From positions 124,001 through 188,000 of IMG/VR virus record IMGVR_UViG_3300025012_000028: DNA of 64,000 nt. One strand, written 5' to 3'. Within the stretch, counting starts at the first letter, position 1. Every line of letters starts with the position of its first letter. The notes under the pieces are model-generated. The model was not told the origin of the DNA, did no database searches, and was given only the letters and a program-made list of their open reading frames with translations. Below are positions 7,185 to 35,721 of the stretch, piece by piece. The translations under genes were made by a program, and so were the position numbers.

Positions 7185-7523
7185 TTATTTACCGAGATAA
7201 TAAACTGTAAGGAGAATTACGGAGGTATGAAGAAACTGATCAAACCCGATGGAGGTAAAGAATTCATGCCTCCTTTCTTTTGCCCATAGATACGAGTTGA
7301 TTCTACTGGTCACACCATCAATGATGATATGGGAAACAAAAGCAATTGCTCCAAATTTCAAATCCAAAAACCAAAAGGGAATAGAATAAACGAAACAATG
7401 GATACCCAACCATTTGAGAGATTTGGATTTGTTGACTGCCATTTCATCTGTTTGCCAAACAAAATCAAAAACCCAATGTGCTAAATTCAAAACCAAAAGT
7501 AGACATAAAAGTTGAGAGGACAT
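7185..7523 (-). CDS. DUF3307 membrane protein
   Basis: AHWVFDFVWQ...MA.NK, H...Y, SHIIID and GFDQFLH motifs. Confidence 0.8.
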   Translation of the reverse strand: MSSQLLCLLLVLNLAHWVFDFVWQTDEMAVNKSKSLKWLGIHCFVYSIPFWFLDLKFGAIAFVSHIIIDGVTSRINSYLWAKERRHEFFTSIGFDQFLHTSVILLTVYYLGK

Positions 7524-7576
7524 TTGTTCTCCTTAAGAATTATAGATTTCCAACCACTTGAAATAGGTTTGGTATA

Positions 7577-7978
7577 TTAAACTCCTACCTGAAAGATTTC
7601 TTCACCCTCAAAATCTTGCCAGATGTTTTTCATATTTTCCAGAATGTTTGTAGGAACATCATGAATATTCCCAAAATCATTACAGCACTTGATAACTGTC
7701 AGATCGTAACCATGTTTCTCTGCCAAATCAACATAACGTTTAAATGCTTTCCTCTTGCTAAAGACACCAGAAATAGTGACATCAATCTTATGATCTACAC
7801 ACTGACACACCAACTCATACATCTTTTCAATTCCTGCCTGAAGTCTCTCAGGAGTCCAAAGGTACTTACCATCGGTGATTAGAAATTGATCCGACTCAAG
7901 GTGGACAGTATTGAAAGTTTTTGCTAATGTACTCTTGCCACTTCCCGGCAACCCTCGTAATATCCGCAGTTTTGGCAT
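7577..7978 (-). CDS. AAA_33-type P-loop (polynucleotide-kinase-like) protein
   Basis: ILRGLPGSGKSTLA Walker A, E.D.F, and NIHDVP C-terminal motif. Confidence 0.8.
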   Translation of the reverse strand: MPKLRILRGLPGSGKSTLAKTFNTVHLESDQFLITDGKYLWTPERLQAGIEKMYELVCQCVDHKIDVTISGVFSKRKAFKRYVDLAEKHGYDLTVIKCCNDFGNIHDVPTNILENMKNIWQDFEGEEIFQVGV

Positions 7979-8457
7979 TTAATATCCTCTCTTTCGTATA
8001 GCTTCTTTGTGATTGGTGCGGATTACATTTTCAAAATAAGAAAAAATTTGCGGATATAAATGGTGACTATTTCTTTCTTGATACCATATAACTGTAATTG
8101 TGTCAAGATAATAATTCCTCATAAACAAATTCGTCTGGATAAAAGTTCTCTTATCCTGTATCTTTTCCAATTCTTTCAATGAAATGCGGTAATCGGAAAA
8201 TAGACTCTGGAATTTGGAGTTGAGATGATTAAAATCCCCTTTAGGTAATTGTTTAAGCAAACACACCAATCGTTTTGCCGCAACGGTAGACCCGTAATTA
8301 TTGAGGTTCATCATCCCTCCTATAGACCGTTTCGTTGATTCGCACAGATTTAAATTCGCCTTTACCAATCAATACAATATCCAAATCTACAGAACAATCG
8401 ACACATATAAAGCTAAGTAAATCATAATCATCAAATTCAAAGAAAACATTTTCGTGT

Positions 8458-9579
8458 TTACACATTTTGGCTCTCCCAGAAGTCTTTGATGGTGTTCACC
8501 AGAATCCCATTAATCTTCTCAAAATTGGCACTGTGGGGAAGTGTGGAAACCTTATATAGATCTTCGAACCTCAACATATATTGGTCACATATACCCATTA
8601 GTTCTTCGTACTTGTACTTACCATTTTTCACATCAAAAACGAATTCACGATCTTCCGGCTTAAGACGAACACTCAGAGTACCGTCCCTTAGAATTTCTTC
8701 ACCTTGAAGGAGCAATCTGAAAACATGACTCATGTGCTTGCTGTCATAACCGAATTTAGCTTCTAGTTCTGCACGTTTGGGATTTCGTTTCTCCATCCAT
8801 TCCTGATACTGTTTCCAATTGCTCATTGCCGCAGCATAGGTTTTCTCTTTGGCAAACACAACCATAACATCCGATTTGAAATGATCTTCACCAACGGCAA
8901 CCACAACATCCAACATATTGTTGAGGTTGTTTGCTACCACCGGGAAAACAAAATCGGAAAAGGCATCTTCCAAAACTTCACGAATATCAAACTCAAAGTA
9001 ATTCCGAAACACTGACTTGGTAATTTCATCAGCGGTTTCGGCCAATACCTCATTGATTGAGAATTTGAGACTTTCCTTGATAACATGTTCGATGCTTCCC
9101 ATCAGTTCCTTAGACATAGAACTAGGGTCAGGAAGTCCATAAGCGGCTCTTGTGGGCTTTTCCAGTATGGGATTCAACAGCCAGTGCCTATGAGATTTAA
9201 CACGCTTCAATTGGGAATATGCGTAACCAGTGTAGGTATGTTTCACCTTCTTAGTAAGGAACATGGATCGGAATTGTTTGAGTGCTTTCCAGTGTTCTGA
9301 TTCATAAATCAAACAGTCTTGGGAAATAAAAAAGAATTCCAAGATGTTGGGATTTCCTTTAATTGCCAAGTCTGTAAATTTTTTAATGTCGAAGATAGTA
9401 CGATCCGGTTCTTTGGAAACCTTCTGTTCAAAGTTATGAAGACCTAGATAATATTCGGGAGGGGAAATAGCAACACCACGATAATCGGTATCACTTTCCG
9501 GTGTCGATAGTCCATAAGCCTGACTACCAATGATGGCTTCAAAAATTATATTCTTTTCCAACCACGTTTCAGGATTCAT
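8458..9579 (-). CDS. RlaP/YcgL-like pol-beta superfamily nucleotidyltransferase
   Basis: GSQAYGLSTPESDTDYRG, GNPNILE, Y.GYAYSQ and GYDSKHMSHVFRLL motifs. Confidence 0.85.
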   Translation of the reverse strand: MNPETWLEKNIIFEAIIGSQAYGLSTPESDTDYRGVAISPPEYYLGLHNFEQKVSKEPDRTIFDIKKFTDLAIKGNPNILEFFFISQDCLIYESEHWKALKQFRSMFLTKKVKHTYTGYAYSQLKRVKSHRHWLLNPILEKPTRAAYGLPDPSSMSKELMGSIEHVIKESLKFSINEVLAETADEITKSVFRNYFEFDIREVLEDAFSDFVFPVVANNLNNMLDVVVAVGEDHFKSDVMVVFAKEKTYAAAMSNWKQYQEWMEKRNPKRAELEAKFGYDSKHMSHVFRLLLQGEEILRDGTLSVRLKPEDREFVFDVKNGKYKYEELMGICDQYMLRFEDLYKVSTLPHSANFEKINGILVNTIKDFWESQNV

Positions 9580-12262: not shown

Positions 12263-13486
12263 TTAGTTCTTTCCCTCGTTGAGAATTTCTTTGTACTTGT
12301 GAGCATAAACGTTCTCGACAAAGTTGATAGTGGCATCGTTCCCTCGCTTGAGGATATGTTTGGGAACATTCACATCAGCTTCCTTGAAAGTTCTTTCCAG
12401 ACGATTGATGATACTGAACTGATCGGCATCGAAAGGATAATCACAATCACATGCCCTCACGAAATCCCAAGCATAATATTTGACACGTTTGAAAAACCTA
12501 ATCAGCTTGACAGGTTTCATTTTGGTCAGGTTGTGGATCATGTGGTTGTTCGCCACAACATTGATCAGTTTATTCTCATGCTTCGTGAACCTCATGAAGT
12601 TGAGGTACGGAGTCAGAATCTTGGCGCTCTCGTGTTCATGACCGTAGTGGTGTCGCCCGTTCCGGTAATCCTCAGACTGAGCAGTAACCGCCTTACCGAC
12701 ATCATGGAACAGAACCGCAAGGAAAACCTGATACGAGTAACCTTTCTCCGCGCAGAGGTCGATACTTTTCATTACATGCTCAAATGCCGTATCGTTGACG
12801 TGGTGGGTATGTTCCGGTCCCGCATAGAAATTGGTCAGATCAGCAAGAGGTTTAAAATGATACTTCAGTGCATCAATTTCATGAAGAAATTTGAAGAACA
12901 TAGAAGGATATTTTGAATCCTCGTATACTTTCTTCAGTTCAGCACATACCCTATCAGTAGGAATGTTTACTAGTTTTTCGACGTTCTGTTTCATAAGATC
13001 CATAGTTTCCACGTCACATTTCAAACAGAAACGAGAAATGAACCTTGCGCCTCTGTAAATGCGAAGTGGATCTTCCACAAATGCGACCGGATTTACACAA
13101 CGAAGGATTTTATTTTTAACGTCCTCCGCGCCGTTGAATGGATCTACAATTTCCCCAGACAGGTAATGTTGTGCAATGCTATTGATGGTAAAATCTCTCC
13201 TACCAAGATCAACTTCAATCTGAACACCAGAATGAACTTCAAAGTCTTGATATTTTTCACCAACACATTTTTCAGAACGAGTCAAAGCAATCTCAGATCC
13301 ATCGGTATTGAGATACACCGGAAAACAATCCCCGACCTTGTTAAGAGTAGGAAAGAACTGTTCAAATGATTCTTGAGATGCTTGGACAGTGTAATCTACA
13401 TCTTTAGGTTCAACCCCCATGATAGCATCACGGACACAACCACCAACTTTATAAAGATGAAATTTTTCAGAAATGGTATCGAGCAT
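12263..13486 (-). CDS. cca: CCA-adding tRNA nucleotidyltransferase with HD domain
   Basis: VGGCVRD, DVD, DLGRRDFTINSIA, EDPLRIYRGARF and LFHDVGK motifs; start MLDTISE after AGGAGG. Confidence 0.9.
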   Translation of the reverse strand: MLDTISEKFHLYKVGGCVRDAIMGVEPKDVDYTVQASQESFEQFFPTLNKVGDCFPVYLNTDGSEIALTRSEKCVGEKYQDFEVHSGVQIEVDLGRRDFTINSIAQHYLSGEIVDPFNGAEDVKNKILRCVNPVAFVEDPLRIYRGARFISRFCLKCDVETMDLMKQNVEKLVNIPTDRVCAELKKVYEDSKYPSMFFKFLHEIDALKYHFKPLADLTNFYAGPEHTHHVNDTAFEHVMKSIDLCAEKGYSYQVFLAVLFHDVGKAVTAQSEDYRNGRHHYGHEHESAKILTPYLNFMRFTKHENKLINVVANNHMIHNLTKMKPVKLIRFFKRVKYYAWDFVRACDCDYPFDADQFSIINRLERTFKEADVNVPKHILKRGNDATINFVENVYAHKYKEILNEGKN

Positions 13487-13521
13487 ATTCCCTCCTAAAT
13501 TGAAATTCCCAACTGCCAAAG

Positions 13522-13550
13522 ATTGTAGCACAATTGGGAATTAAAGTCAA
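13522..13550 (-). promoter_or_regulatory. sigma70-type promoter overlapped by a hairpin
   Basis: TTGACT-17-TACAAT; AATTCCCAA...TTGGGAATT inverted repeat at 13504-13542. Confidence 0.7.
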
Positions 13551-13554
13551 TAGT

Positions 13555-13854
13555 TTATTTTGAATTATTTGTCTGGATGTATTTGGCTCTGAAAAAGTAA
13601 GGGACGGAAATCACTGGATATATTTCTCTATCAAACAGATTTGTGAACACAACATAATTCAATTTGTTTTTGTTACATGGCTCACATGCAACACAGAAAT
13701 TATCCTCACCAATCCCATTTCCCAGATCAACCGGGATGATATGGTCCAAACTCGGTTTCCCGACAATTGGTTTCCGGCAATAGAGACAAATCCCATTTTG
13801 TTCTTGGAATTTCTTTTCCCTCATTTCAATTCTAAATTGGTGCGACTCCCTCAT
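13555..13854 (-). CDS. small HNH endonuclease
   Basis: CLYC...SLDHIIP...G.G.DN..ACEPCNKNK. Confidence 0.85.
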   Translation of the reverse strand: MRESHQFRIEMREKKFQEQNGICLYCRKPIVGKPSLDHIIPVDLGNGIGEDNFCVACEPCNKNKLNYVVFTNLFDREIYPVISVPYFFRAKYIQTNNSK

Positions 13855-20090: not shown

Positions 20091-20115
20091 TATTATGCCT
20101 CTGTGTGTTTAAAAT

Positions 20116-20123
20116 TATTTATA
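20116..20123 (-). promoter_or_regulatory. T4-type late promoter TATAAATA
   Basis: Exact consensus about 25 nt upstream of the MISFK start at 20090. Confidence 0.75.
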
Positions 20124-20149
20124 AAATCTATATTGAGGATAAACCAATC

Positions 20150-21079
20150 ATGAAAGATAAAACATATTATATCATTTACGAAACTACAAATTTATTAAAT
20201 GGTAAAAAATATAGGGGAGCGCATAAAACTAAAAATATAAATGATGGGTATATGGGGAGTGGTGTGATAATTAATCAAGCAATTTTGAAATATGGAAAAG
20301 AAAATTTTGAAACAATTCATTTAGCATATGCGTTATCATATGATGATCTTTTTTGGTTAGAAGAATATGTTTTCGTGACTAAAGAATGGGTTGATTTGCC
20401 ACATTCTTATAATTTAAGAGTGGGTGGATGTGGCAAATATTACGAAGAACAAACTAAACAAACATGTTTAGACAAATATGGGGTTGAATTCTATTCCCAA
20501 ACTGAAGAATGTAAACTTAAGAAAATTAACACATGTTTAGAAAAATATGGAGTTGAATTCTATGTTCAAACCGAAGATTTTAAGTTGATAATGAAAAATA
20601 AATACAGCGAAGATAACCCACATCCCTTAACTGGCAGGCCAGTTTTACCAGAAACAAAAGAAAAACTCAGAATCGCAAATTTAGGAAAAGTCACGTCAGA
20701 AGAAACCAAAGCAAAAATAAGCGTAAAATCTTCTGGTAAAAACAACCCTAATTATGGTATTAAACATACAAATGAGACTAAAGAAAAATGTAGCAAAGTA
20801 AATCAAAAATATGAATATAAACTAATTTCACCTAATGGTGAAATTTTCACAACTTTATCATTATTTAATTTTTGTGCCGCAAATGAACTGGATAGAAATG
20901 CATTTAGAAATATTCTTAGGGTTGGTAGAACGACCGTAGAATGTCCCAAAAATGTTACACAATGTAGTAAGTTAAGATTTAATACTACTGGATGGTCGAT
21001 AGAAGAAATGGAGATTATCCCAACTTCACCCAAAGCAAAGTATCCAAGAGAGAAATCATCAATTCCACTCCGTTGGTAA
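20150..21079 (+). mobile_element. GIY-YIG (Seg-like) homing endonuclease with NUMOD3 repeats
   Basis: YIIYETTNLLNGKKYRGAH...DGYMGSG...AILKYGKENF...E...YNL.VGG; ETKEKL / ETKAKIS / G.NNPNYG repeats; likely ATG at 20150 after GAGG. Confidence 0.85.
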
Positions 21080-24823: not shown

Positions 24824-25593
24824 TCATGTGTTTTCTCCGTTGTGAAAGTTATAGATAGCGTCTGCCAATTTGTCTGGATTGATAATATCCTCATCAAAAC
24901 TCCATCCTTTCCAACCTCCAACTAAACAATAATCCCTTCGAAAATCGTTCCACCAATTTTGTTTCTGAGCAAATTTCCAAAGTTTACCAAAATTTTCCCA
25001 CGTTGAAAAATTCATTTTGTAAAATGAAGGTGTATATGAAACTTCAAACCCACACCTCAAACACACGTATTTATCATACCGTTCTTGAAAAGTTGGTCCT
25101 TCGTGTGAATATTCGTCGTGCCAACATTCACCCACCAATTCTGTTAAGAATTTATCTCTATCAGACTTTTCAGACATGGCTTCTCCTTCAAGAAATTGAA
25201 AACCTTATTAGCAAATTTATCTGGATCAATCTCTTTAAGAAAAAGAGATTGATATTTTATACAAACTGGATTTAAACCAAGAGCGGTATATGGTTTTTCT
25301 TTGTCCTGATCTAATATTGCTCCGATAACATGATGGTCTTGTTGCTTCAGCCAATTGAGTAGTTTAAAGAAACCATCCGGTGTGGAGAAATCATTCTTCT
25401 GTCTAAATTGAACATTGTTTTTATCATCCCAAGGGTGAATATGATAACTGTATTCCCCACACTTGCAGATATGAACAATTTCATTATCGTGATATGGTAT
25501 GGAATGATCCGATTCGTGCCAGCAATCACCAATCAACCTAGTCAGAAATTTCTCTCTTTCAACATTGGAATAAAGTTCACTGTCTGGAATCAT
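24824..25593 (-). CDS. two tandem paralogous hypothetical proteins (24824-25177 and 25144-25593)
   Basis: Shared R.KFLT.L.G.CWH, CxxCG/CxCG, FST...F.KL and I.PDK.A....NF motifs. Confidence 0.7.
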
Positions 25594-26390
25594 TTCAACT
25601 TACCTCCTTTTAATTTGCAATTATTGCCATGCCACCTTAAATAATTTGTCTTATTACTTTCTTTGTTGCAAAACTCACATATAAATTTTTTCCCAATTAC
25701 ATTTGTAAAATTTTGATTTTCTCTTAGTATTTTATATATCTTACTAAGTTTAAGATTAAATTTTTCTGATATTATTTCTGCACATATATTTTTATTTTTC
25801 ATATCGACAATTTCATCTATAATTAGCTGTGGTACATATATAGTTTTAGAAGTTCTTAAAAAATTAAGAACTTCTTCTGTATGTTTTTTGCCATAAAAAG
25901 GATTCAATTTCCCTTTTTTGCCGTACATAGAGTTTTTAACTCCACTGTTATCTTCTGATTGTTTTTTTCTAAAATCATCTGATCTTTTTTTGCCTATATG
26001 TAAAACTCCTTTATAATTAGGATTCTTTTCACCTTTCATATTATCAGATAATATTTTTATGTGAGAAGGTGCAAGTAGTTTACCTTTTTTGAGATCGGAC
26101 ACCAATTTGGAGTGTTCCGTTTTTATCCATTCGTATGTTCTATTTGTATATTTTTTCTTATTACAATACATCATCATATTTGCTGCAAATATTAAAGAAG
26201 GTGTTTTGTGACTTTTGGCTAATAATAAGTGTGCTATAAAATGTTCTCTGGCCTTCAATCTAACTATATTTTCTTTTGTATTTGTACCACCCATACATTT
26301 TGGTATAATGTGATGCCTTTCTCCATATCCTATAAACGTTTTTGTTTTACGAGTCTCTATAAGTTGATTATAAATTTTCAGATAGTTCAT
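25590..26390 (-). mobile_element. HNH (Mob-like) homing endonuclease with NUMOD3 repeats
   Basis: MNYLKIY..LI...ERHHIIPKCMGG...EN...L.AREHFIAH.LL; GEKNPNY and NPFYGKKHTEE repeats; RWHGNNCK tail. Confidence 0.88.
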
Positions 26391-26430
26391 AACTACATTC
26401 CCCTTTTTGTGGTTGATGTAGTTATTTATA
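26389..26430 (-). promoter_or_regulatory. late promoter plus RBS-sequestering hairpin of the HNH gene
   Basis: TATAAATA at 26423-26430; perfect 10-bp stem ATAACTACAT/ATGTAGTTAT enclosing the RBS and reaching the start codon. Confidence 0.75.
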
Positions 26431-26431
26431 A

Positions 26432-26827
26432 TCATTTTTTCACCCCTCTATTTTCAAAGAAAAAAATGATGTATTGCATTTCTTCTTTTGAAATAAGTTC
26501 GTGGTACATCTTGGCTGTTGTTTGGTTTACCTGAAAATGCTCCATCAGGTATTGTATTTCCTGTTCTTTCTTGGGTTTGGTACAATTCCAAGGGATATAC
26601 TTTCCCTTGCCCTTGTTGTCAATCTCAGGCAAACCATGATACAAACAATCATAATGCATACGATCATCCATTGGTTTGCTTAATTCACACGCAAGGAAAA
26701 CCAATGACTGGTCGTTACTCATAATCTTACCCATCATCCATTGTGAATAACCTGACAACTCTTCATTGGAAAGGTGCGGCTTCTTGGTAAAACACATCTT
26801 CATTACATCGAATGGTGAAAGTGACAT
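26432..26827 (-). CDS. 62: clamp loader small subunit (gp62-like)
   Basis: SPFD....F..K, Y..WM....S, MHYD.LY..L and YL.EHF.VN...A..Y pattern; close to gp44/gp45. Confidence 0.7.
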   Translation of the reverse strand: MSLSPFDVMKMCFTKKPHLSNEELSGYSQWMMGKIMSNDQSLVFLACELSKPMDDRMHYDCLYHGLPEIDNKGKGKYIPWNCTKPKKEQEIQYLMEHFQVNQTTAKMYHELISKEEMQYIIFFFENRGVKK

Positions 26828-31907: not shown

Positions 31908-33211
31908 TCAAATAAAAAACTTGTTGCTGATTTCTACCGTGACTTTCTTGGGTCTGCCACGTTTCTTCTTTTCACCCGGAATATCGGTGGTAGGTTTCAC
32001 CACATTTTCTTCTGGTAGTTTTGCTTTCCTACCACGTTTTGATATTTCCTTTTTAATCATCCTAGCAGTCTTTTTGTCTTCGCGCAATTTCTTTTTTTCA
32101 GTTTTTAATAATTCTTTTTCTGCTTTCTTCTGATCCTTGATTTTCTTCTTATTAAGTTTCTCCAATTCCAAAACTTTCTTTTCAGTTTCGCGCTCTTTTT
32201 TAGAGAGTGCCTTTTGTTTGCGCACAATAGAATCAGGAAGTGGGAACAGAGGAACCCCGTATTTCTCTAGATAAAAATCCGGAATGGGTTCTTCTTGAAG
32301 TCGTTCATAATTTTTGGTATAGGTCGAACATTTGATTTTATCACAGGTTGGACAAGAGAAGATACACACCACATGCGGAACCCTCGCTGATTTCAAATCA
32401 CAAAAAACGTACATCTATTTCTCCTGAGTAATCTTCAAAGAATCACTGAACATTCCAGTCAACTTATAAACATAATTCTTGCGTTTCCATCCGTTTGCGA
32501 ATTCCCTGATGATTCTTCTATTTATTGTACAATCATCATCCCAAAAATAATCTTCCTTATATTCACCAGAACATACTGGACATTCCTTATGAATATAATC
32601 ACTGAAGATGGTCAGTTTGTAAAGCTTACCCGTACCACCACAACATTTGCAGGATGGTTTTAATTTCTTAAACCAGTTGAACACAATAACTCCTAACTTT
32701 TCGAAAAAGTATGAACAATCTTTGTAAATTTGATATTGCGTGATTCAATTATCCCATCGATATATTTAATAGCTGCTTCTTCTGTGCTAAAACAAACTTC
32801 GCCCAGACAATCCATACATACGCAGGTATACCAACTTTTCCAGAACAGAAACCATTTATATTGAGGGACAAATGAAATCGTTTCCCCATTTCTCTTATGT
32901 TCTATAATTCTATATTTCATTTACACAACCCCCAAATAATTTAATAAACGCTCTGCCACGTTATCAGCATCCATTTTATAAAGCTTTCTTATACCCATGC
33001 CACTCACAATAAAATTTCCACAACCCTCAAATGCGGTCATGGTACAGGCAATACCTTCACCATCATCAATGGTCATTCGTGATCCATTGAATACCCGATG
33101 TTGTACTGTCACCACAAGTCCCTTATCCCGCAAGATTTCAGCAACCCGATCAAATATAGGTTCGAAGGTCCAATATCGAATATGTGCTGGTCTGAGAGGC
33201 CAACGAGACAT
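31908..33211 (-). CDS. hypothetical proteins (31908-32414 Cys-rich and lysine-rich with an AT-hook-like KKRGRPKK; 32415-32684; 32693-32920; 32921-33211)
   Basis: Coupled ORFs; RGRP motif in the first. Confidence 0.55.
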
Positions 33212-33214
33212 ATA

Positions 33215-33505
33215 TTATCCTTCCACCACGAAGATTTTTCTTGCGGCACGAATTTCTTTAACCCTATTTACATCGAAGGAACGATATTGTTTTTTACTCA
33301 TTTCAAATACCGTCACAATGTTATCAGGAGATGCAGCTTTGTTCTTGGAAGGATTTTGGACCAGATGTTTATAAACTCCCCTGCGGCAATTCATCTTGCG
33401 TTCCGAACCGTCCTTTTTCTCAAAATGTACAGAAAAAATAGCACTCTTGGGGATCATACACAGGATCATCTCAACTTCTTCTTTCGAAATGGATATTTTT
33501 CTCAT
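33215..33505 (-). CDS. SH3-like beta-barrel phage protein
   Basis: FSVHFEKKDGSERKM...VFEM.K.QYRSF pattern. Confidence 0.6.
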   Translation of the reverse strand: MRKISISKEEVEMILCMIPKSAIFSVHFEKKDGSERKMNCRRGVYKHLVQNPSKNKAASPDNIVTVFEMSKKQYRSFDVNRVKEIRAARKIFVVEG

Positions 33506-33543
33506 AAAAATTCCTCCTAGAGTATGATTCGAAATCTAGGAGG

Positions 33544-33572
33544 AATTTACCACGGAATTAATTATTTGTCAA
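33544..33572 (-). promoter_or_regulatory. sigma70 promoter overlapping an RBS-containing hairpin
   Basis: TTGACA-17-TAAATT; AAATTCCTCCTAGA...TCTAGGAGGAATTT stem at 33508-33548. Confidence 0.7.
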
Positions 33573-33588
33573 GAAATAATTTTCGAAA

Positions 33589-33682
33589 TATAAATAGAAG
33601 TGGCAAGTAAGATTTTTTAGCGGGAACTAAAAAATCGGTCAACGGAGAGTGTGTTGATTGTCCTTGCTCATTCTATTTATCT
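33589..33682 (+). promoter_or_regulatory. late promoter plus multi-stem structured leader
   Basis: TATAAATA at 33589-33596; an outer stem closing two inner hairpins. Confidence 0.6.
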
Positions 33683-33694
33683 TCAAGGAGAGTC

Positions 33695-34576
33695 ATGTCT
33701 AGAAAACTCACAAATGAAATCATCGATGAACGTCTACTAGGAAGAAAAATTATCAGAATTGGTGACTATAAAACTGCATTAACCAAAATATCATGGAAAT
33801 GTTTGAAGGATGGTTATGTTTGGAACGCAACACCACACGATATAAATTCAGGATATGGATGTCCTGCTTGTGCCAATAAAATACCAATTACGAATGAAAC
33901 AATAGACATCAAATTACAAAACAGATCTATTGTCCGAATTGGCGATTGTATTGGACAGAACAATAAAATTTTATTCTGTTGTCAAATATGTGATTATCAA
34001 TGGGTCACAACACCGAAAAGTATTTTACATGGAAATGGTTGTCCTGAGTGTTCGGGTAAAGTACCATTAACAAATGAAAGAATCGATAATAAATTATCAA
34101 ATAGACCAATAAAAAGAATTGGTAATTGTACCGAGGGCAATAAAATTAATATAGAATGGCAATGTCTTATAGAAACTTGTGGTTCTATATGGAAAGCTTC
34201 GCCGGGTAGTGTATTGAACAATTTCAGAGGATGTCCACATTGTAGGTACAAAAATGAAAAACGTATATATGACTATTTAAGAGAACAGTATTCCCAATTA
34301 AATATTACTCCTCAATATAGAATACATATAAACAACAAACTTTTTGTGATAGATTTCAACCTCAATGATATATTCATTGAATATCATGGCATTCAACATT
34401 ACGAACCAGTTGAATATTTTGGTGGAAAGAAATCTTTTATCAAACAAATTAAACGAGATTACTTACTGAGGGAATATTGTAGTGAAAATAAAATCAAACT
34501 TATAGAAATACCTCATTGGTTTACGAACGATGAACAATATGAATTGTTACAATTTTCGTTAAAAACTTCGACATGA
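33695..34576 (+). mobile_element. zinc-ribbon repeat plus PD-(D/E)xK/Vsr-like homing-type endonuclease
   Basis: Three C...W...GCPxC repeats; NEKRI, IDF, FIEYHGIQHY, RD...REYC and LIEIP motifs. Confidence 0.8.
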
Positions 34577-35721
34577 TTCCTAGTAGGCCCATATGAAACC
34601 ATAGCAATGTTTTTATTCTTGATAAATTCTCTCACATTTTGGGAAATAATTTGGCCTTCATCAATATATTTTATTGTTTCATCTTCCAATTGATCAACAC
34701 AAGTCATACAAACTTTGTGGATTATACAAACACCTTTGTTGTTGTTTTCAAATAAATCTTTTCTGATAGCTTTTCTAATCAAATCAAGGTTTAAAAAACT
34801 AAACCTTAAAGTTCCTTGCCATTGATTGGGAATGTTGGTGGCATCGATGATATTGCAATAGGGTTTATCTACCAATTCCATTGGCAATGGTCCGTTACCG
34901 TGTCGAGTAGTATAAGTTCGCATAACATAGGTAACTTCAATTTCTTTTATATCCATTTCAACACTCAATTCTATTATATTATTCAACCCCGTCTTGGATC
35001 TTGTGACATACGGAAAGAATTCGTTATTTTCATCAAGAAGTAACCCTTGAGCACCTTCGAAAATAACGTTTTTATATCTTTCACTTATATCTTTAGCAGA
35101 CGATAAAATGATTATTCCTTTAAAGAATTCTAAATCTTTAATATACCGATTGATCATATTTTCATTTTCCATCAGTGATTTATAATTATCTGGAATAGTT
35201 TGAATTTCCAACTTTTGGATTCGTTTATATGCATATTGTTTGATTTTTTTAAGTTCTTCATATTCGGAAGTTAAATTAAAAATTAGTCCATTTATGTCGT
35301 GTCGTTCGATAGTTTCCGAAATGCCCATTCCACAGGAACCATGACGATTACCGCCACGCATATCTTCCATCATTTGGTTGAGGATCATGTCATATGGAGT
35401 GGTCACTTTACAAGAAGGATCGACATACACAATGGGTTTAACCCCCTTGGAAACAAGTTCCTCATACTCCTGTCGGAAAATGATGGGATTGACAATGAAA
35501 TGTTTGGAAAGGAAAGTGGGCGAACCATTGAAGCTACCGCTTCCAAAATGGTGGAATACATGGCGAACTCCTTCAGGTGTCACTACGGTATGTCCTGCCT
35601 GTGCTCCACCGTTAAAACGTACCACCACGGCTTCCTCGTTGTACTTTGCAGAAAGGTAATCGACCTGTTTCCCTTTTGCACAATCCCCAAACCCCGAACC
35701 TATGACAGCAAATCCTTTCAT
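34513..35721 (-). CDS. divergent adenylosuccinate synthetase-like ligase
   Basis: GFGDCAKG, RFNGGAQAGHTV, HGSCGMGI, FEGAQG.LLD, PYVTRS.TG and TRHGNGP motifs. Confidence 0.85.
   Translation of the reverse strand: MKGFAVIGSGFGDCAKGKQVDYLSAKYNEEAVVVRFNGGAQAGHTVVTPEGVRHVFHHFGSGSFNGSPTFLSKHFIVNPIIFRQEYEELVSKGVKPIVYVDPSCKVTTPYDMILNQMMEDMRGGNRHGSCGMGISETIERHDINGLIFNLTSEYEELKKIKQYAYKRIQKLEIQTIPDNYKSLMENENMINRYIKDLEFFKGIIILSSAKDISERYKNVIFEGAQGLLLDENNEFFPYVTRSKTGLNNIIELSVEMDIKEIEVTYVMRTYTTRHGNGPLPMELVDKPYCNIIDATNIPNQWQGTLRFSFLNLDLIRKAIRKDLFENNNKGVCIIHKVCMTCVDQLEDETIKYIDEGQIISQNVREFIKNKNIAMVSYGPTRNHVEVFNENCNNSYCSSFVNQ

What the first reader, a model, noticed from the sequence alone, without database searches (positions are those of the whole stretch)
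33589..33694. Multi-stem structured RNA in front of a zinc-ribbon endonuclease
Seen: an outer stem ATAAATAGAA..GCAAG / CTTGC..TTCTATTTAT that includes the late promoter. It encloses hairpin GATTTTTTAG-CGGGAA-CTAAAAAATC and hairpin GGTCAAC-GGAGAGTGT-GTTGATT, directly before the AAGGAG RBS. Inference: a cis-regulatory or nuclease-associated ncRNA, or the end structure of a mobile element. It is more elaborate than the single hairpin on the HNH gene.
Basis: partly seen in the sequence, partly recalled or inferred. Interest (0 to 1): 0.6.

Follow-up and report, generated by a model that had tools for sequence, protein, structure and literature searches.

The report
Shared structured leader of phage homing-endonuclease genes
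The three-stem fold is real and belongs to a conserved, roughly 95-base promoter-to-ribosome-site cassette that sits in front of homing-endonuclease genes of several unrelated families in T4-like environmental phages, most likely to restrict when and how much of these DNA-cutting enzymes is made.

Summary
The fold exists exactly as described (window 33590-33680; -29.7 kcal/mol, z -3.7). It is not specific to the zinc-ribbon nuclease: about 155 homologous nuclease genes elsewhere lack it.

It is one of five copies in this 214.5 kb T4-like phage genome. These precede two zinc-ribbon/Vsr-like, two GIY-YIG and one HNH-type homing endonuclease gene (HEG). I collected 31 distinct copies from more than 20 viral contigs, and nearly all lie directly upstream of HEG-type genes.

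Anatomy:
- The closing helix has a 5' arm that is the T4-type late promoter box TATAAATA and a 3' arm that mirrors it.
- Helices P1b, P2 and P3 covary strongly (84-98% paired; covariation score 0.55 against 0.15 in shuffles).
- Junction motifs RUAAK and YUGUCY are conserved.
- The P3 loop repeats each gene's own Shine-Dalgarno sequence plus flanks (0 of 5000 permutations reach the observed match).

Best reading: an elaborated version of the known T4 "late promoter inside a hairpin" control of HEG translation, packaged as a portable module. The Shine-Dalgarno-mimic loop, the Watson-Crick-only helices and the mirrored promoter box point to an additional antisense partner, which is untested. No Rfam family matches and no paper describing it was found. 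No RNA data were available.

The parts
33589..33596 (+). T4-type late promoter box TATAAATA, forming most of the 5' arm of helix P1a (33590-33599)
   Evidence: Sequence. The same box lies 19-60 nt upstream of many ORFs genome-wide. The genome encodes a T4 gp23-type capsid protein.
33590..33680 (+). The whole three-way-junction element (P1a, P1b, P2, P3)
   Evidence: MFE fold. Covariance model R1 scores 122 bits here. 31 distinct relatives fold the same way.
33602..33607 (+). P1b 5' strand (pairs with 33663-33668). A T4-type late transcript (start about 6 nt after the box) would begin here.
   Evidence: P1b is 98.5% paired, with 6 of 6 pairs showing compensatory changes. The start-site position is inferred from established T4 late-promoter geometry.
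33608..33611 (+). Conserved junction motif UAAG (family consensus RUAAK)
   Evidence: Found in 25 of 31 copies.
33611..33636 (+). P2 hairpin (10 bp, loop CGGGAA)
   Evidence: In the family, 8 of 8 modelled pairs covary and 90% are paired.
33637..33659 (+). P3 hairpin. Its loop carries GGAGAGU (33644-33650), a copy of the real Shine-Dalgarno (SD) region at 33687-33693.
   Evidence: Family-wide, the match of each loop to its own SD region averages 7.4 nt against 5.3 nt for other copies' SD regions (0 of 5000 permutations).
33658..33663 (+). Conserved motif UUGUCC (family consensus YUGUCY) at the P3/P1b junction
   Evidence: Present in all 31 copies, but it was part of the search pattern for most of them.
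33663..33680 (+). 3' strands of P1b (33663-33668) and P1a (33671-33680). The reverse complement of 33673-33681 reads GATAAATAG, a mirrored late-promoter-like box on the minus strand.
   Evidence: The mirrored box is a perfect TATAAATA in 20 of 31 copies. L003 (G-C) and L332 (A-U) carry paired changes at the outermost base pair.
33685..33697 (+). Shine-Dalgarno sequence AAGGAG (33685-33690) and the ATG start codon (33695-33697) of the endonuclease gene
33695..34576 (+). Free-standing homing-endonuclease-type gene (293 aa). It has three treble-clef zinc ribbons (DUF4379/CapR) and a C-terminal domain of the kind sources label Vsr-like or DUF723. It is antisense to all its neighbours.
   Evidence: Pfam, PHROGs phrog_559 and phrog_9084, homologues and one source name 'very-short-patch-repair endonuclease', invariant D220, E229, Q234, H235.

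Best explanation
The element is the window's copy of a conserved promoter-to-RBS expression cassette used by free-standing homing endonuclease genes (HEGs) in a clade of T4-like phages. I think it works mainly as the known T4 device in an elaborated form.

Proposed mechanism:
- The late promoter box lies in the 5' arm of the closing helix.
- RNA that reads in from outside contains both arms. It closes the long P1 stem right up to the ribosome binding site, which buries the AU-rich stretch next to the Shine-Dalgarno sequence and, in many copies, the Shine-Dalgarno sequence itself.
- RNA started at the embedded late promoter begins at the foot of P1b. It lacks the 5' arm, keeps only the compact P1b/P2/P3 junction at its 5' end, and leaves the ribosome site open.
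- The enzyme is therefore made late and sparingly.

Shown: the fold, its conservation and covariation, its exclusive placement before HEG-type genes of several families, its modularity, and the computed change in accessibility.

Inferred: the transcription start site, the existence of read-through RNA, and the effect on translation. The role of the Shine-Dalgarno-mimic loop is not explained by this model alone (see first rival).
For: - Five copies in the genome precede five HEG-type genes of three nuclease classes.
- 31 distinct copies across more than 20 viral contigs nearly all precede GIY-YIG, HNH, zinc-ribbon or C2H2 zinc-finger genes.
- Covariation is strong. 90.3% of cells are paired against 65% in shuffles and 38-45% when slid; the score is 0.551 against 0.149 (0 of 500 shuffles).
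- Each sequence folds to the same shape on its own.
- The paralogue copy and the GIY-YIG copy share the module from the box to the Shine-Dalgarno sequence, but nothing before or after it.
- The computed unpaired probability of the Shine-Dalgarno region is 0.30 in read-through RNA against 0.47 in late-start RNA (23 of 28 copies, p=4e-4). With shuffled upstream sequence it is 0.38 (p=0.019).
- In the window copy the 3' arm goes from 0.02 to 0.88 unpaired.
- The closest viral-contig homologue of this nuclease (L002) carries the classical form: a 20-bp hairpin with the box at its top and the RBS in its 3' arm (z -8.9).
- The T4 precedent (I-TevI/II/III, segB, Aeh1 mobE), and the phage 25 seg43(25) hairpin that abuts but does not cover the RBS, are described in PMC2988022.
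Against: - In the window copy the Shine-Dalgarno sequence itself is not more buried in read-through RNA (0.47 against 0.40).
- Most of these genes, including this one, are antisense to their neighbours, so plus-strand read-through RNA may be rare.
- The model explains neither why a simple hairpin is replaced by a three-way junction with conserved junction bases, nor why the P3 loop copies the Shine-Dalgarno flanks.
- The helices do not favour the plus strand. P1 has 9 G.U pairs on the plus strand against 31 positions that would be G.U only on the minus strand, and the minus strand folds more stably in 20 of 27 copies.
- No transcript data exist.
Confidence: 0.55

Rival explanations
1. Sense/antisense pair (may act together with the best explanation). 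The opposite strand is also transcribed through the element, either from the mirrored TATAAATA box in the 3' arm or by read-through of the flanking phage operon. It folds into the mirror-image junction, whose P3 loop is exactly complementary to the endonuclease gene's ribosome binding site. This would block translation or trigger cleavage, and facing promoters would also interfere with each other.
For: - It is the only model here that explains identity, rather than complementarity, between the P3 loop and each gene's own Shine-Dalgarno sequence plus flanks. The match persists in copies with non-canonical sites such as UAUCGGGUA, and spans essentially the loop only.
- No plus-strand segment complementary to the motif sits at a conserved position.
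- The modelled core pairs are almost purely Watson-Crick. MFE folds do contain G.U pairs, mainly in P3, about equally on both strands.
- The minus strand folds as well or better.
- The mirrored box is a perfect TATAAATA in 20 of 31 copies, and is kept in L323 where the plus-strand box is degenerate.
- The loop-to-Shine-Dalgarno identity is one-sided, towards the HEG only.
- Precedent: the CfrI antisense RNA to an HEG in cyanophage S-PM2 (PMC2984593).
Against: - No RNA evidence of any kind.
- The window copy's mirrored box is GATAAATA, not the consensus.
- The copy with the longest loop/Shine-Dalgarno match (L247, second copy) has a degenerate mirrored box.
- An antisense RNA overlapping the leader would pair with it anyway, so the need for a Shine-Dalgarno copy is not compelling.
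- The 3' arm was fixed by my search pattern in most copies, which biases counts of the mirrored box.
Confidence: 0.25
2. Bidirectional insulator or terminator-like module. An A-rich arm, a structured core and a U-rich arm stop or process transcripts entering from either side, so that inserting the endonuclease gene does not disturb the neighbouring phage genes.
For: - The core is followed by a U-rich run on both strands (UUCUAUUUAU).
- The elements sit next to the promoters of the neighbouring phage gene: a sigma-70-like TTGACA/TAAATT at 33572-33544 on the minus strand, and back-to-back late boxes in other copies.
Against: - The terminator scan calls nothing here.
- The stems next to the U-run are A-U rich and the U-runs are interrupted.
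- This does not explain the Shine-Dalgarno-mimic loop or the fixed spacing to the start codon.
Confidence: 0.08
3. A DNA-level element: a palindrome or cruciform that serves as a protein-binding, recombination or homing-related site, or as the inverted-repeat end of a small mobile element.
For: Near-perfect inverted symmetry with few G.T pairs in P1b and P2. No strand preference. The module is found in front of different genes.
Against: - There are no flanking target-site duplications (0-4 of 8 flank bases identical in 30 of 31 copies, 6 of 8 in one).
- Helix sequences differ freely between copies, so no common protein site exists apart from the promoter box.
- Three nuclease families with different DNA-binding modules share it.
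- The tight register with the ribosome site and the Shine-Dalgarno copy are RNA or translation features.
Confidence: 0.07
4. A non-coding RNA partner (guide, cofactor or autoregulatory operator) specific to the zinc-ribbon endonuclease.
For: Two paralogous zinc-ribbon nucleases in this genome, and one homologue in contig L003, carry it.
Against: It is absent from about 155 other homologous loci and present before GIY-YIG, HNH and other genes. Nuclease-specific operators, as in I-TevI, resemble that enzyme's target site; here unrelated enzymes share one design.
Confidence: 0.03

Closest known systems
T4-type 'late promoter inside an RBS hairpin' control of homing endonuclease genes (I-TevI, I-TevII, I-TevIII, segB, Aeh1 mobE; also T4 genes e, soc, 49) (PMC2988022)
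   Same: - A TATAAATA late box lies in the 5' half of a stem directly upstream of an HEG.
- Late transcripts would lack the 5' half.
- The phage is T4-like.
- The ribosome site is computed to be less accessible in longer RNA across the family.
- A homologous nuclease in contig L002 uses the classical form.
   Different: - Here the stem encloses a conserved, covarying three-way junction with fixed junction motifs.
- The 3' arm abuts but usually does not contain the Shine-Dalgarno sequence.
- The arms carry the promoter box on both strands.
- One loop copies the Shine-Dalgarno region.
- The same module is reused by at least 3 nuclease families and in 5 places in one genome.
seg43(25) hairpin of Aeromonas phage 25 (PMC2988022)
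   Same: A very stable structure ends immediately upstream of the RBS of a free-standing seg gene without sequestering it, as in the window copy.
   Different: It is described as a simple hairpin in one phage. No branched core, family or loop/Shine-Dalgarno identity was reported. I did not examine that sequence.
CfrI antisense RNA of cyanophage S-PM2 (Millard et al. 2010, cited in PMC2984593)
   Same: Antisense transcription opposite a homing endonuclease gene in a T4-like phage, thought to regulate it.
   Different: CfrI is about 225 nt and overlaps the coding regions of the HEG and psbA. Here the candidate antisense region is the roughly 80-nt leader, and no transcript has been observed.
I-TevI transcriptional autorepression through an operator overlapping its late promoter (PMC2988022)
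   Same: A control element overlaps the late promoter of an HEG.
   Different: That operator mimics the enzyme's own homing site and is enzyme-specific. This element is shared by unrelated enzymes.
Phage P1/P7 c4 antisense RNA system (from my own knowledge, not tested; Rfam holds a C4 family)
   Same: A structured phage RNA whose loops pair with a ribosome binding site, with the target sequence present in more than one copy.
   Different: c4 and its targets lie on the same strand. No Rfam match was found here at the gathering threshold or at E<=10.

Membership tests
T4-type late-promoter-in-hairpin translational control of homing endonuclease genes | T4 late promoter box (TATAAATA) embedded in the 5' half of the structure | tested here: met
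   The box is at 33589-33596, in the P1a 5' arm. The motif behaves as a promoter box genome-wide.
T4-type late-promoter-in-hairpin translational control of homing endonuclease genes | The 3' half of the structure sequesters the Shine-Dalgarno sequence in longer transcripts | tested here: inconclusive
   In the window copy the stem ends 4 nt before AAGGAG, with no computed difference in accessibility (0.47 against 0.40). Across the family the values are 0.30 against 0.47 (p=4e-4), and 0.38 in the shuffled control (p=0.019).
T4-type late-promoter-in-hairpin translational control of homing endonuclease genes | The controlled gene is a homing endonuclease in a T4-like phage | tested here: met
   endonuclease families; T4-type terminase and gp23 capsid protein.
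T4-type late-promoter-in-hairpin translational control of homing endonuclease genes | Two transcript classes exist: read-through RNA, and late RNA starting inside the structure | not testable with these tools
   No RNA run holds the stretch. The start site is inferred from T4 promoter geometry.
Any described RNA family (Rfam 15) | Match to a curated covariance model | tested here: not met
   There are no matches at gathering scores in the whole window. At E<=10 only weak chance hits appear: the two with E below 1 that are not snoRNA models lie on the neighbouring hairpin, and two snoRNA hits (E 0.66 and 6.1, far below gathering) overlap the element on the minus strand.
Cis-encoded antisense RNA regulators (kissing-loop type) | A promoter on the opposite strand directed through the structured region | tested here: inconclusive
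   The mirrored box is GATAAATAG in the window and a perfect TATAAATA in 20 of 31 copies. Counts are biased by the search pattern and function is not shown.
Cis-encoded antisense RNA regulators (kissing-loop type) | A loop of the antisense RNA complementary to the target's ribosome binding site | tested here: met
   The P3 loop equals each gene's own Shine-Dalgarno sequence plus flanks, so its complement pairs with the real site over 7-10 nt.
Cis-encoded antisense RNA regulators (kissing-loop type) | The antisense transcript is detected | not testable with these tools
   none was listed.
Intrinsic (rho-independent) terminator | A G+C-rich stem directly followed by a run of U | tested here: not met
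   The scan of 33100-34800 calls no terminator at the element. The arms are A-U rich and the U-run is interrupted.
Transposon or MITE-like element with terminal inverted repeats | Target-site duplication flanking the inverted repeats | tested here: not met
   The 8-nt flanks share 0-4 identities in 30 of 31 copies and 6 in one.

The most novel reading that the evidence does not exclude
The cassette is a two-strand device: facing late promoters, or operon read-through, produce mirror-image three-way-junction RNAs. The minus-strand RNA carries, in its P3 loop, a tailor-made anti-Shine-Dalgarno sequence for the endonuclease gene next to it. This would be a self-contained, portable antisense repressor that selfish nuclease genes carry with them to stay harmless to the phage. 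It would be a new class of structured phage regulatory RNA, defined by covariation through identity between a loop and a distant ribosome binding site.
Probability: 0.25. Interest if true: 0.8.

Novelty: new variant of a known kind. Interest (0 to 1): 0.62.

Why it matters
Homing endonucleases are selfish DNA-cutting genes that must be kept quiet to be tolerated. In T4 this is done gene by gene with simple hairpins.

Here a single, conserved, branched RNA/DNA module is shared by at least three unrelated endonuclease families, five times in one genome and across many uncultured T4-like phages. It is exchanged as a unit that runs exactly from the promoter to the ribosome site. This suggests that the regulatory leader is itself a portable part of these mobile genes.

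The loop that copies each gene's ribosome site is an unusual signal, because it covaries by identity rather than complementarity. It gives a directly testable hypothesis for antisense or decoy control.

Practically, the model gives a new marker for finding free-standing endonuclease genes, and their decayed remnants, in phage metagenomes.

Tried and rejected
- **Public phage records.** Similarity searches with the locus found nothing.
- **Close relatives of the nuclease.** An exact-peptide scan found none.
- **Population variation.** Contigs carrying the identical nuclease or the identical neighbouring gene are all identical over the element and all carry the endonuclease. There was therefore no population variation and no endonuclease-free allele to define the cassette borders. 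One search was a coordinate slip, corrected.
- **Capsid-based relatives.** Three relatives were found, and their records have no copy.
- **Cultured T4-like phages with related Seg-type genes.** pf16, Acj61 and PM2 have no copy. A T-even phage with a 56%-identical GIY-YIG domain has only a 55-nt intergenic space.
- **Small ribozymes and riboswitches.** A hammerhead needs a CUGAUGA core, which is absent. A purine-type junction needs a long J2/3, which is 0-2 nt here. Rfam gives no match.
- **Pseudoknot between the P3 loop and the YUGUCY motif.** Rejected on geometry: only 1-2 nt would have to cross an 8-bp stem.
- **Upstream ORF started from the P3 Shine-Dalgarno copy.** There is no consistent start codon (by eye).
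- **Plus-strand partner complementary to the Shine-Dalgarno motif.** None sits at a conserved position.
- **Mirror-image identity between P2 and the neighbouring gene's ribosome site.** None.
- **Strand test by G.U against A.C.** It does not favour the plus strand.
- **RNA-seq.** Only three small metatranscriptome runs from the same samples were listed, and none holds the stretch.
- These were size-limit slips, corrected.
- **Structure and complex prediction.** Not needed for the question.

Full report
**Observation**

It folds, alone or in a 215-nt context, into an outer stem enclosing two hairpins.
- P1a: 33590-33599 with 33671-33680.
- P1b: 33602-33607 with 33663-33668.
- P2: 33611-33636.
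- P3: 33637-33659.
- AAGGAG follows at 33685-33690 and ATG at 33695.
- Energy is -29.7 kcal/mol, z -3.7 against dinucleotide shuffles, with 1 of 200 shuffles folding as well.

**Setting**

The window is part of a 214,553-bp IMG/VR viral contig (36.5% G+C) from groundwater metagenomes. The genome encodes a T4 gp23-type capsid protein and a T4-type large terminase.

TATAAATA, the T4 late promoter box, lies 19-60 nt upstream of many ORFs, often as TATAAATAAAAGAAA. The promoter role is inferred from established T4 knowledge.

The downstream gene (33695-34576) encodes a 293-aa protein with three treble-clef zinc ribbons (DUF4379/CapR). Its conserved C-terminal domain is of the kind sources call DUF723 or Vsr-like, and PHROGs file it with homing or HNH endonucleases. 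It is the only plus-strand gene among minus-strand neighbours, and its 3' end overlaps that of a purA-like gene. This is typical of a free-standing homing endonuclease gene (HEG).

**From one fold to a family**

A 48%-identical paralogue elsewhere in the genome has the same upstream architecture with different helix sequences. So does one homologue in another contig, L003.

A covariance model built from these three sequences found five copies in the genome. They precede the two zinc-ribbon genes, two GIY-YIG/NUMOD3 Seg-like genes and one HNH/endonuclease-VII-like gene. Five other HEG-like genes in the genome lack the element.

The model found nothing upstream of about 155 other homologues of the zinc-ribbon nuclease. 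The closest viral-contig homologue (L002) instead has a classical 20-bp hairpin, with the promoter-like box at its top and the RBS in its 3' arm (z -8.9).

Further copies came from three routes:
- one in a complete 254-kb phage contig;
- a DNA-pattern scan of viral contigs, filtered with the model;
- whole-record scans, which added copies not selected by the pattern.

In all there are 31 distinct sequences from more than 20 contigs. The genes behind them are:
- GIY-YIG/NUMOD3 (most);
- HNH/NUMOD3;
- DUF723/DUF4379 zinc-ribbon;
- C2H2 zinc-finger proteins;
- a few degenerate stubs.

No Rfam family matches. Full-text searches found no description of such an element.

**Anatomy and conservation**

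Every sequence folds on its own into the same three-way junction. On the model-fitted alignment, with P1a put in register:
- 90.3% of cells pair, against 65% after shuffling partners and 38-45% after sliding them;
- the covariation score is 0.551 against 0.149 (0 of 500 shuffles);
- all 19 modelled pairs of P1b, P2 and P3 show changes on both sides.

Caveats: the alignment leans towards the model, and most copies were found with a pattern that fixes the two boxes and YUGUCY.

The junction motifs RUAAK and YUGUCY are conserved. A T4-type start, about 6 nt after the box, falls at or within a few bases of the foot of P1b.

The two arms of P1a are the same box on opposite strands. Two copies carry matched changes at the outermost pair: G-C in L003 and A-U in L332.

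The paralogue copy and the neighbouring GIY-YIG copy are nearly identical from the box to the Shine-Dalgarno sequence, with a compensated, divergent P2. They are unrelated before and after that stretch. The unit is therefore a promoter-to-RBS module.

**The unexpected feature**

In almost every copy the P3 loop repeats the gene's own Shine-Dalgarno sequence with its flanks. Examples are GGAGAGU here and, elsewhere, AGGAGCAAA, GGAGUUAUA, GUGAGGUA and even UAUCGGGUA.
- The match of a loop to its own gene's site averages 7.4 nt, against 5.3 nt to other copies' sites (0 of 5000 permutations).
- The identity covers essentially the loop.
- No plus-strand segment complementary to the motif lies at a conserved place.
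- There is no mirror-image identity towards the neighbouring gene.

**How it probably works**

The known T4 device (PMC2988022) fits the layout. Long RNAs form the closing stem, while late RNAs start inside it and leave the ribosome site free.

Computed accessibility supports this moderately for the family. The Shine-Dalgarno region is 0.30 unpaired in long RNA against 0.47 in late-start RNA (23 of 28 copies, p=4e-4). A shuffled-upstream control gives 0.38 (p=0.019).

In the window copy only the AU-rich 3' arm next to the site changes (0.02 to 0.88). This resembles the seg43(25) case noted in that review.

Three observations point beyond a plus-strand-only device:
- the modelled core pairs are almost purely Watson-Crick;
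- G.U pairs in the MFE folds do not favour the plus strand, and for P1 they favour the minus strand (9 against 31), while the minus strand folds more stably in 20 of 27 copies;
- identity between loop and ribosome site is what one expects if the complement of the loop, on the other strand, must pair with the real site.

Most of these genes are antisense to their neighbours. The mirrored arm is often a perfect late box. Minus-strand RNA through the element is therefore plausible.

I rate this antisense component at about 0.25. It is compatible with the main model, and an antisense RNA to an HEG is known in a T4-like cyanophage. Terminator, DNA-palindrome and nuclease-specific readings are weaker.

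**Limits**

No transcript data exist. No endonuclease-free allele was found. Cultured T4-like phages that I tested lack the element.

Noticed in passing
window 33509-33548 (minus-strand gene 33215-33505): A perfect 14-bp hairpin whose one arm carries the AGGAGG ribosome site of the leftward WYL_2-like gene. A sigma-70-like promoter (TTGACA at 33572-33567, TG-extended TAAATT ending at 33544) points into it. This looks like a classical RBS-sequestering hairpin on the neighbouring gene.
   Followed up: partly
window 34513-34576: The endonuclease gene and the convergent adenylosuccinate-synthetase-like (purA-like) phage gene overlap by 64 nt at their 3' ends. Some population variants split the purA-like gene into two ORFs.
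   Followed up: no
G000 109597-115504 (outside the window; loci L162, L164, L165): Two copies of the leader, with nearly identical P1 and P3 but a compensated, divergent P2, drive a GIY-YIG gene and a zinc-ribbon gene about 4.7 kb apart. This is evidence that the leader moves between endonuclease genes.
   Followed up: partly
window 13555-13854 (-), 20105-21079 (+), 25590-26435 (-); G000 7396-8145 (+), 104531-105340 (-): Five further HEG-like genes (HNH, NUMOD3, GIY-YIG) lack the element. Several sit in line with their neighbours as promoter-less cassettes, and one has a plain late box 24 nt upstream.
   Followed up: partly
L187 (G042:99702-99810), L247:2727-2835, L323: Leader copies followed by only a 25-aa ORF, by no ORF, or by a 61-aa GIY-YIG stub. 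The leader seems to outlive decayed endonuclease genes.
   Followed up: no
L002:679-732 and L009: Homologous zinc-ribbon nucleases in another phage contig use a simple 20-bp hairpin with a GATAAATAAT box at its top and the RBS in the 3' arm. This is the classical T4 arrangement.
   Followed up: partly
left border of several copies (e.g. G000 114328-114339; L248, L251, L213): The endonuclease gene's late box overlaps, back to back, a late box for the divergent neighbouring gene (TATTTATAAATA or TATTTATATAAATA). Other copies have strong sigma-70-like promoters for the neighbour right beside the element.
   Followed up: no
G000 196344-196607 (outside the window): A short gp23-like (capsid) match containing an in-frame TGA, far from the two intact gp23/gp24-like genes. 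It may be a gene fragment.
   Followed up: no
window 8458-9579 and 12263-13531: Phage-encoded nucleotidyltransferases, one matching tRNA nucleotidyltransferase (CCA-adding type) families.
   Followed up: no
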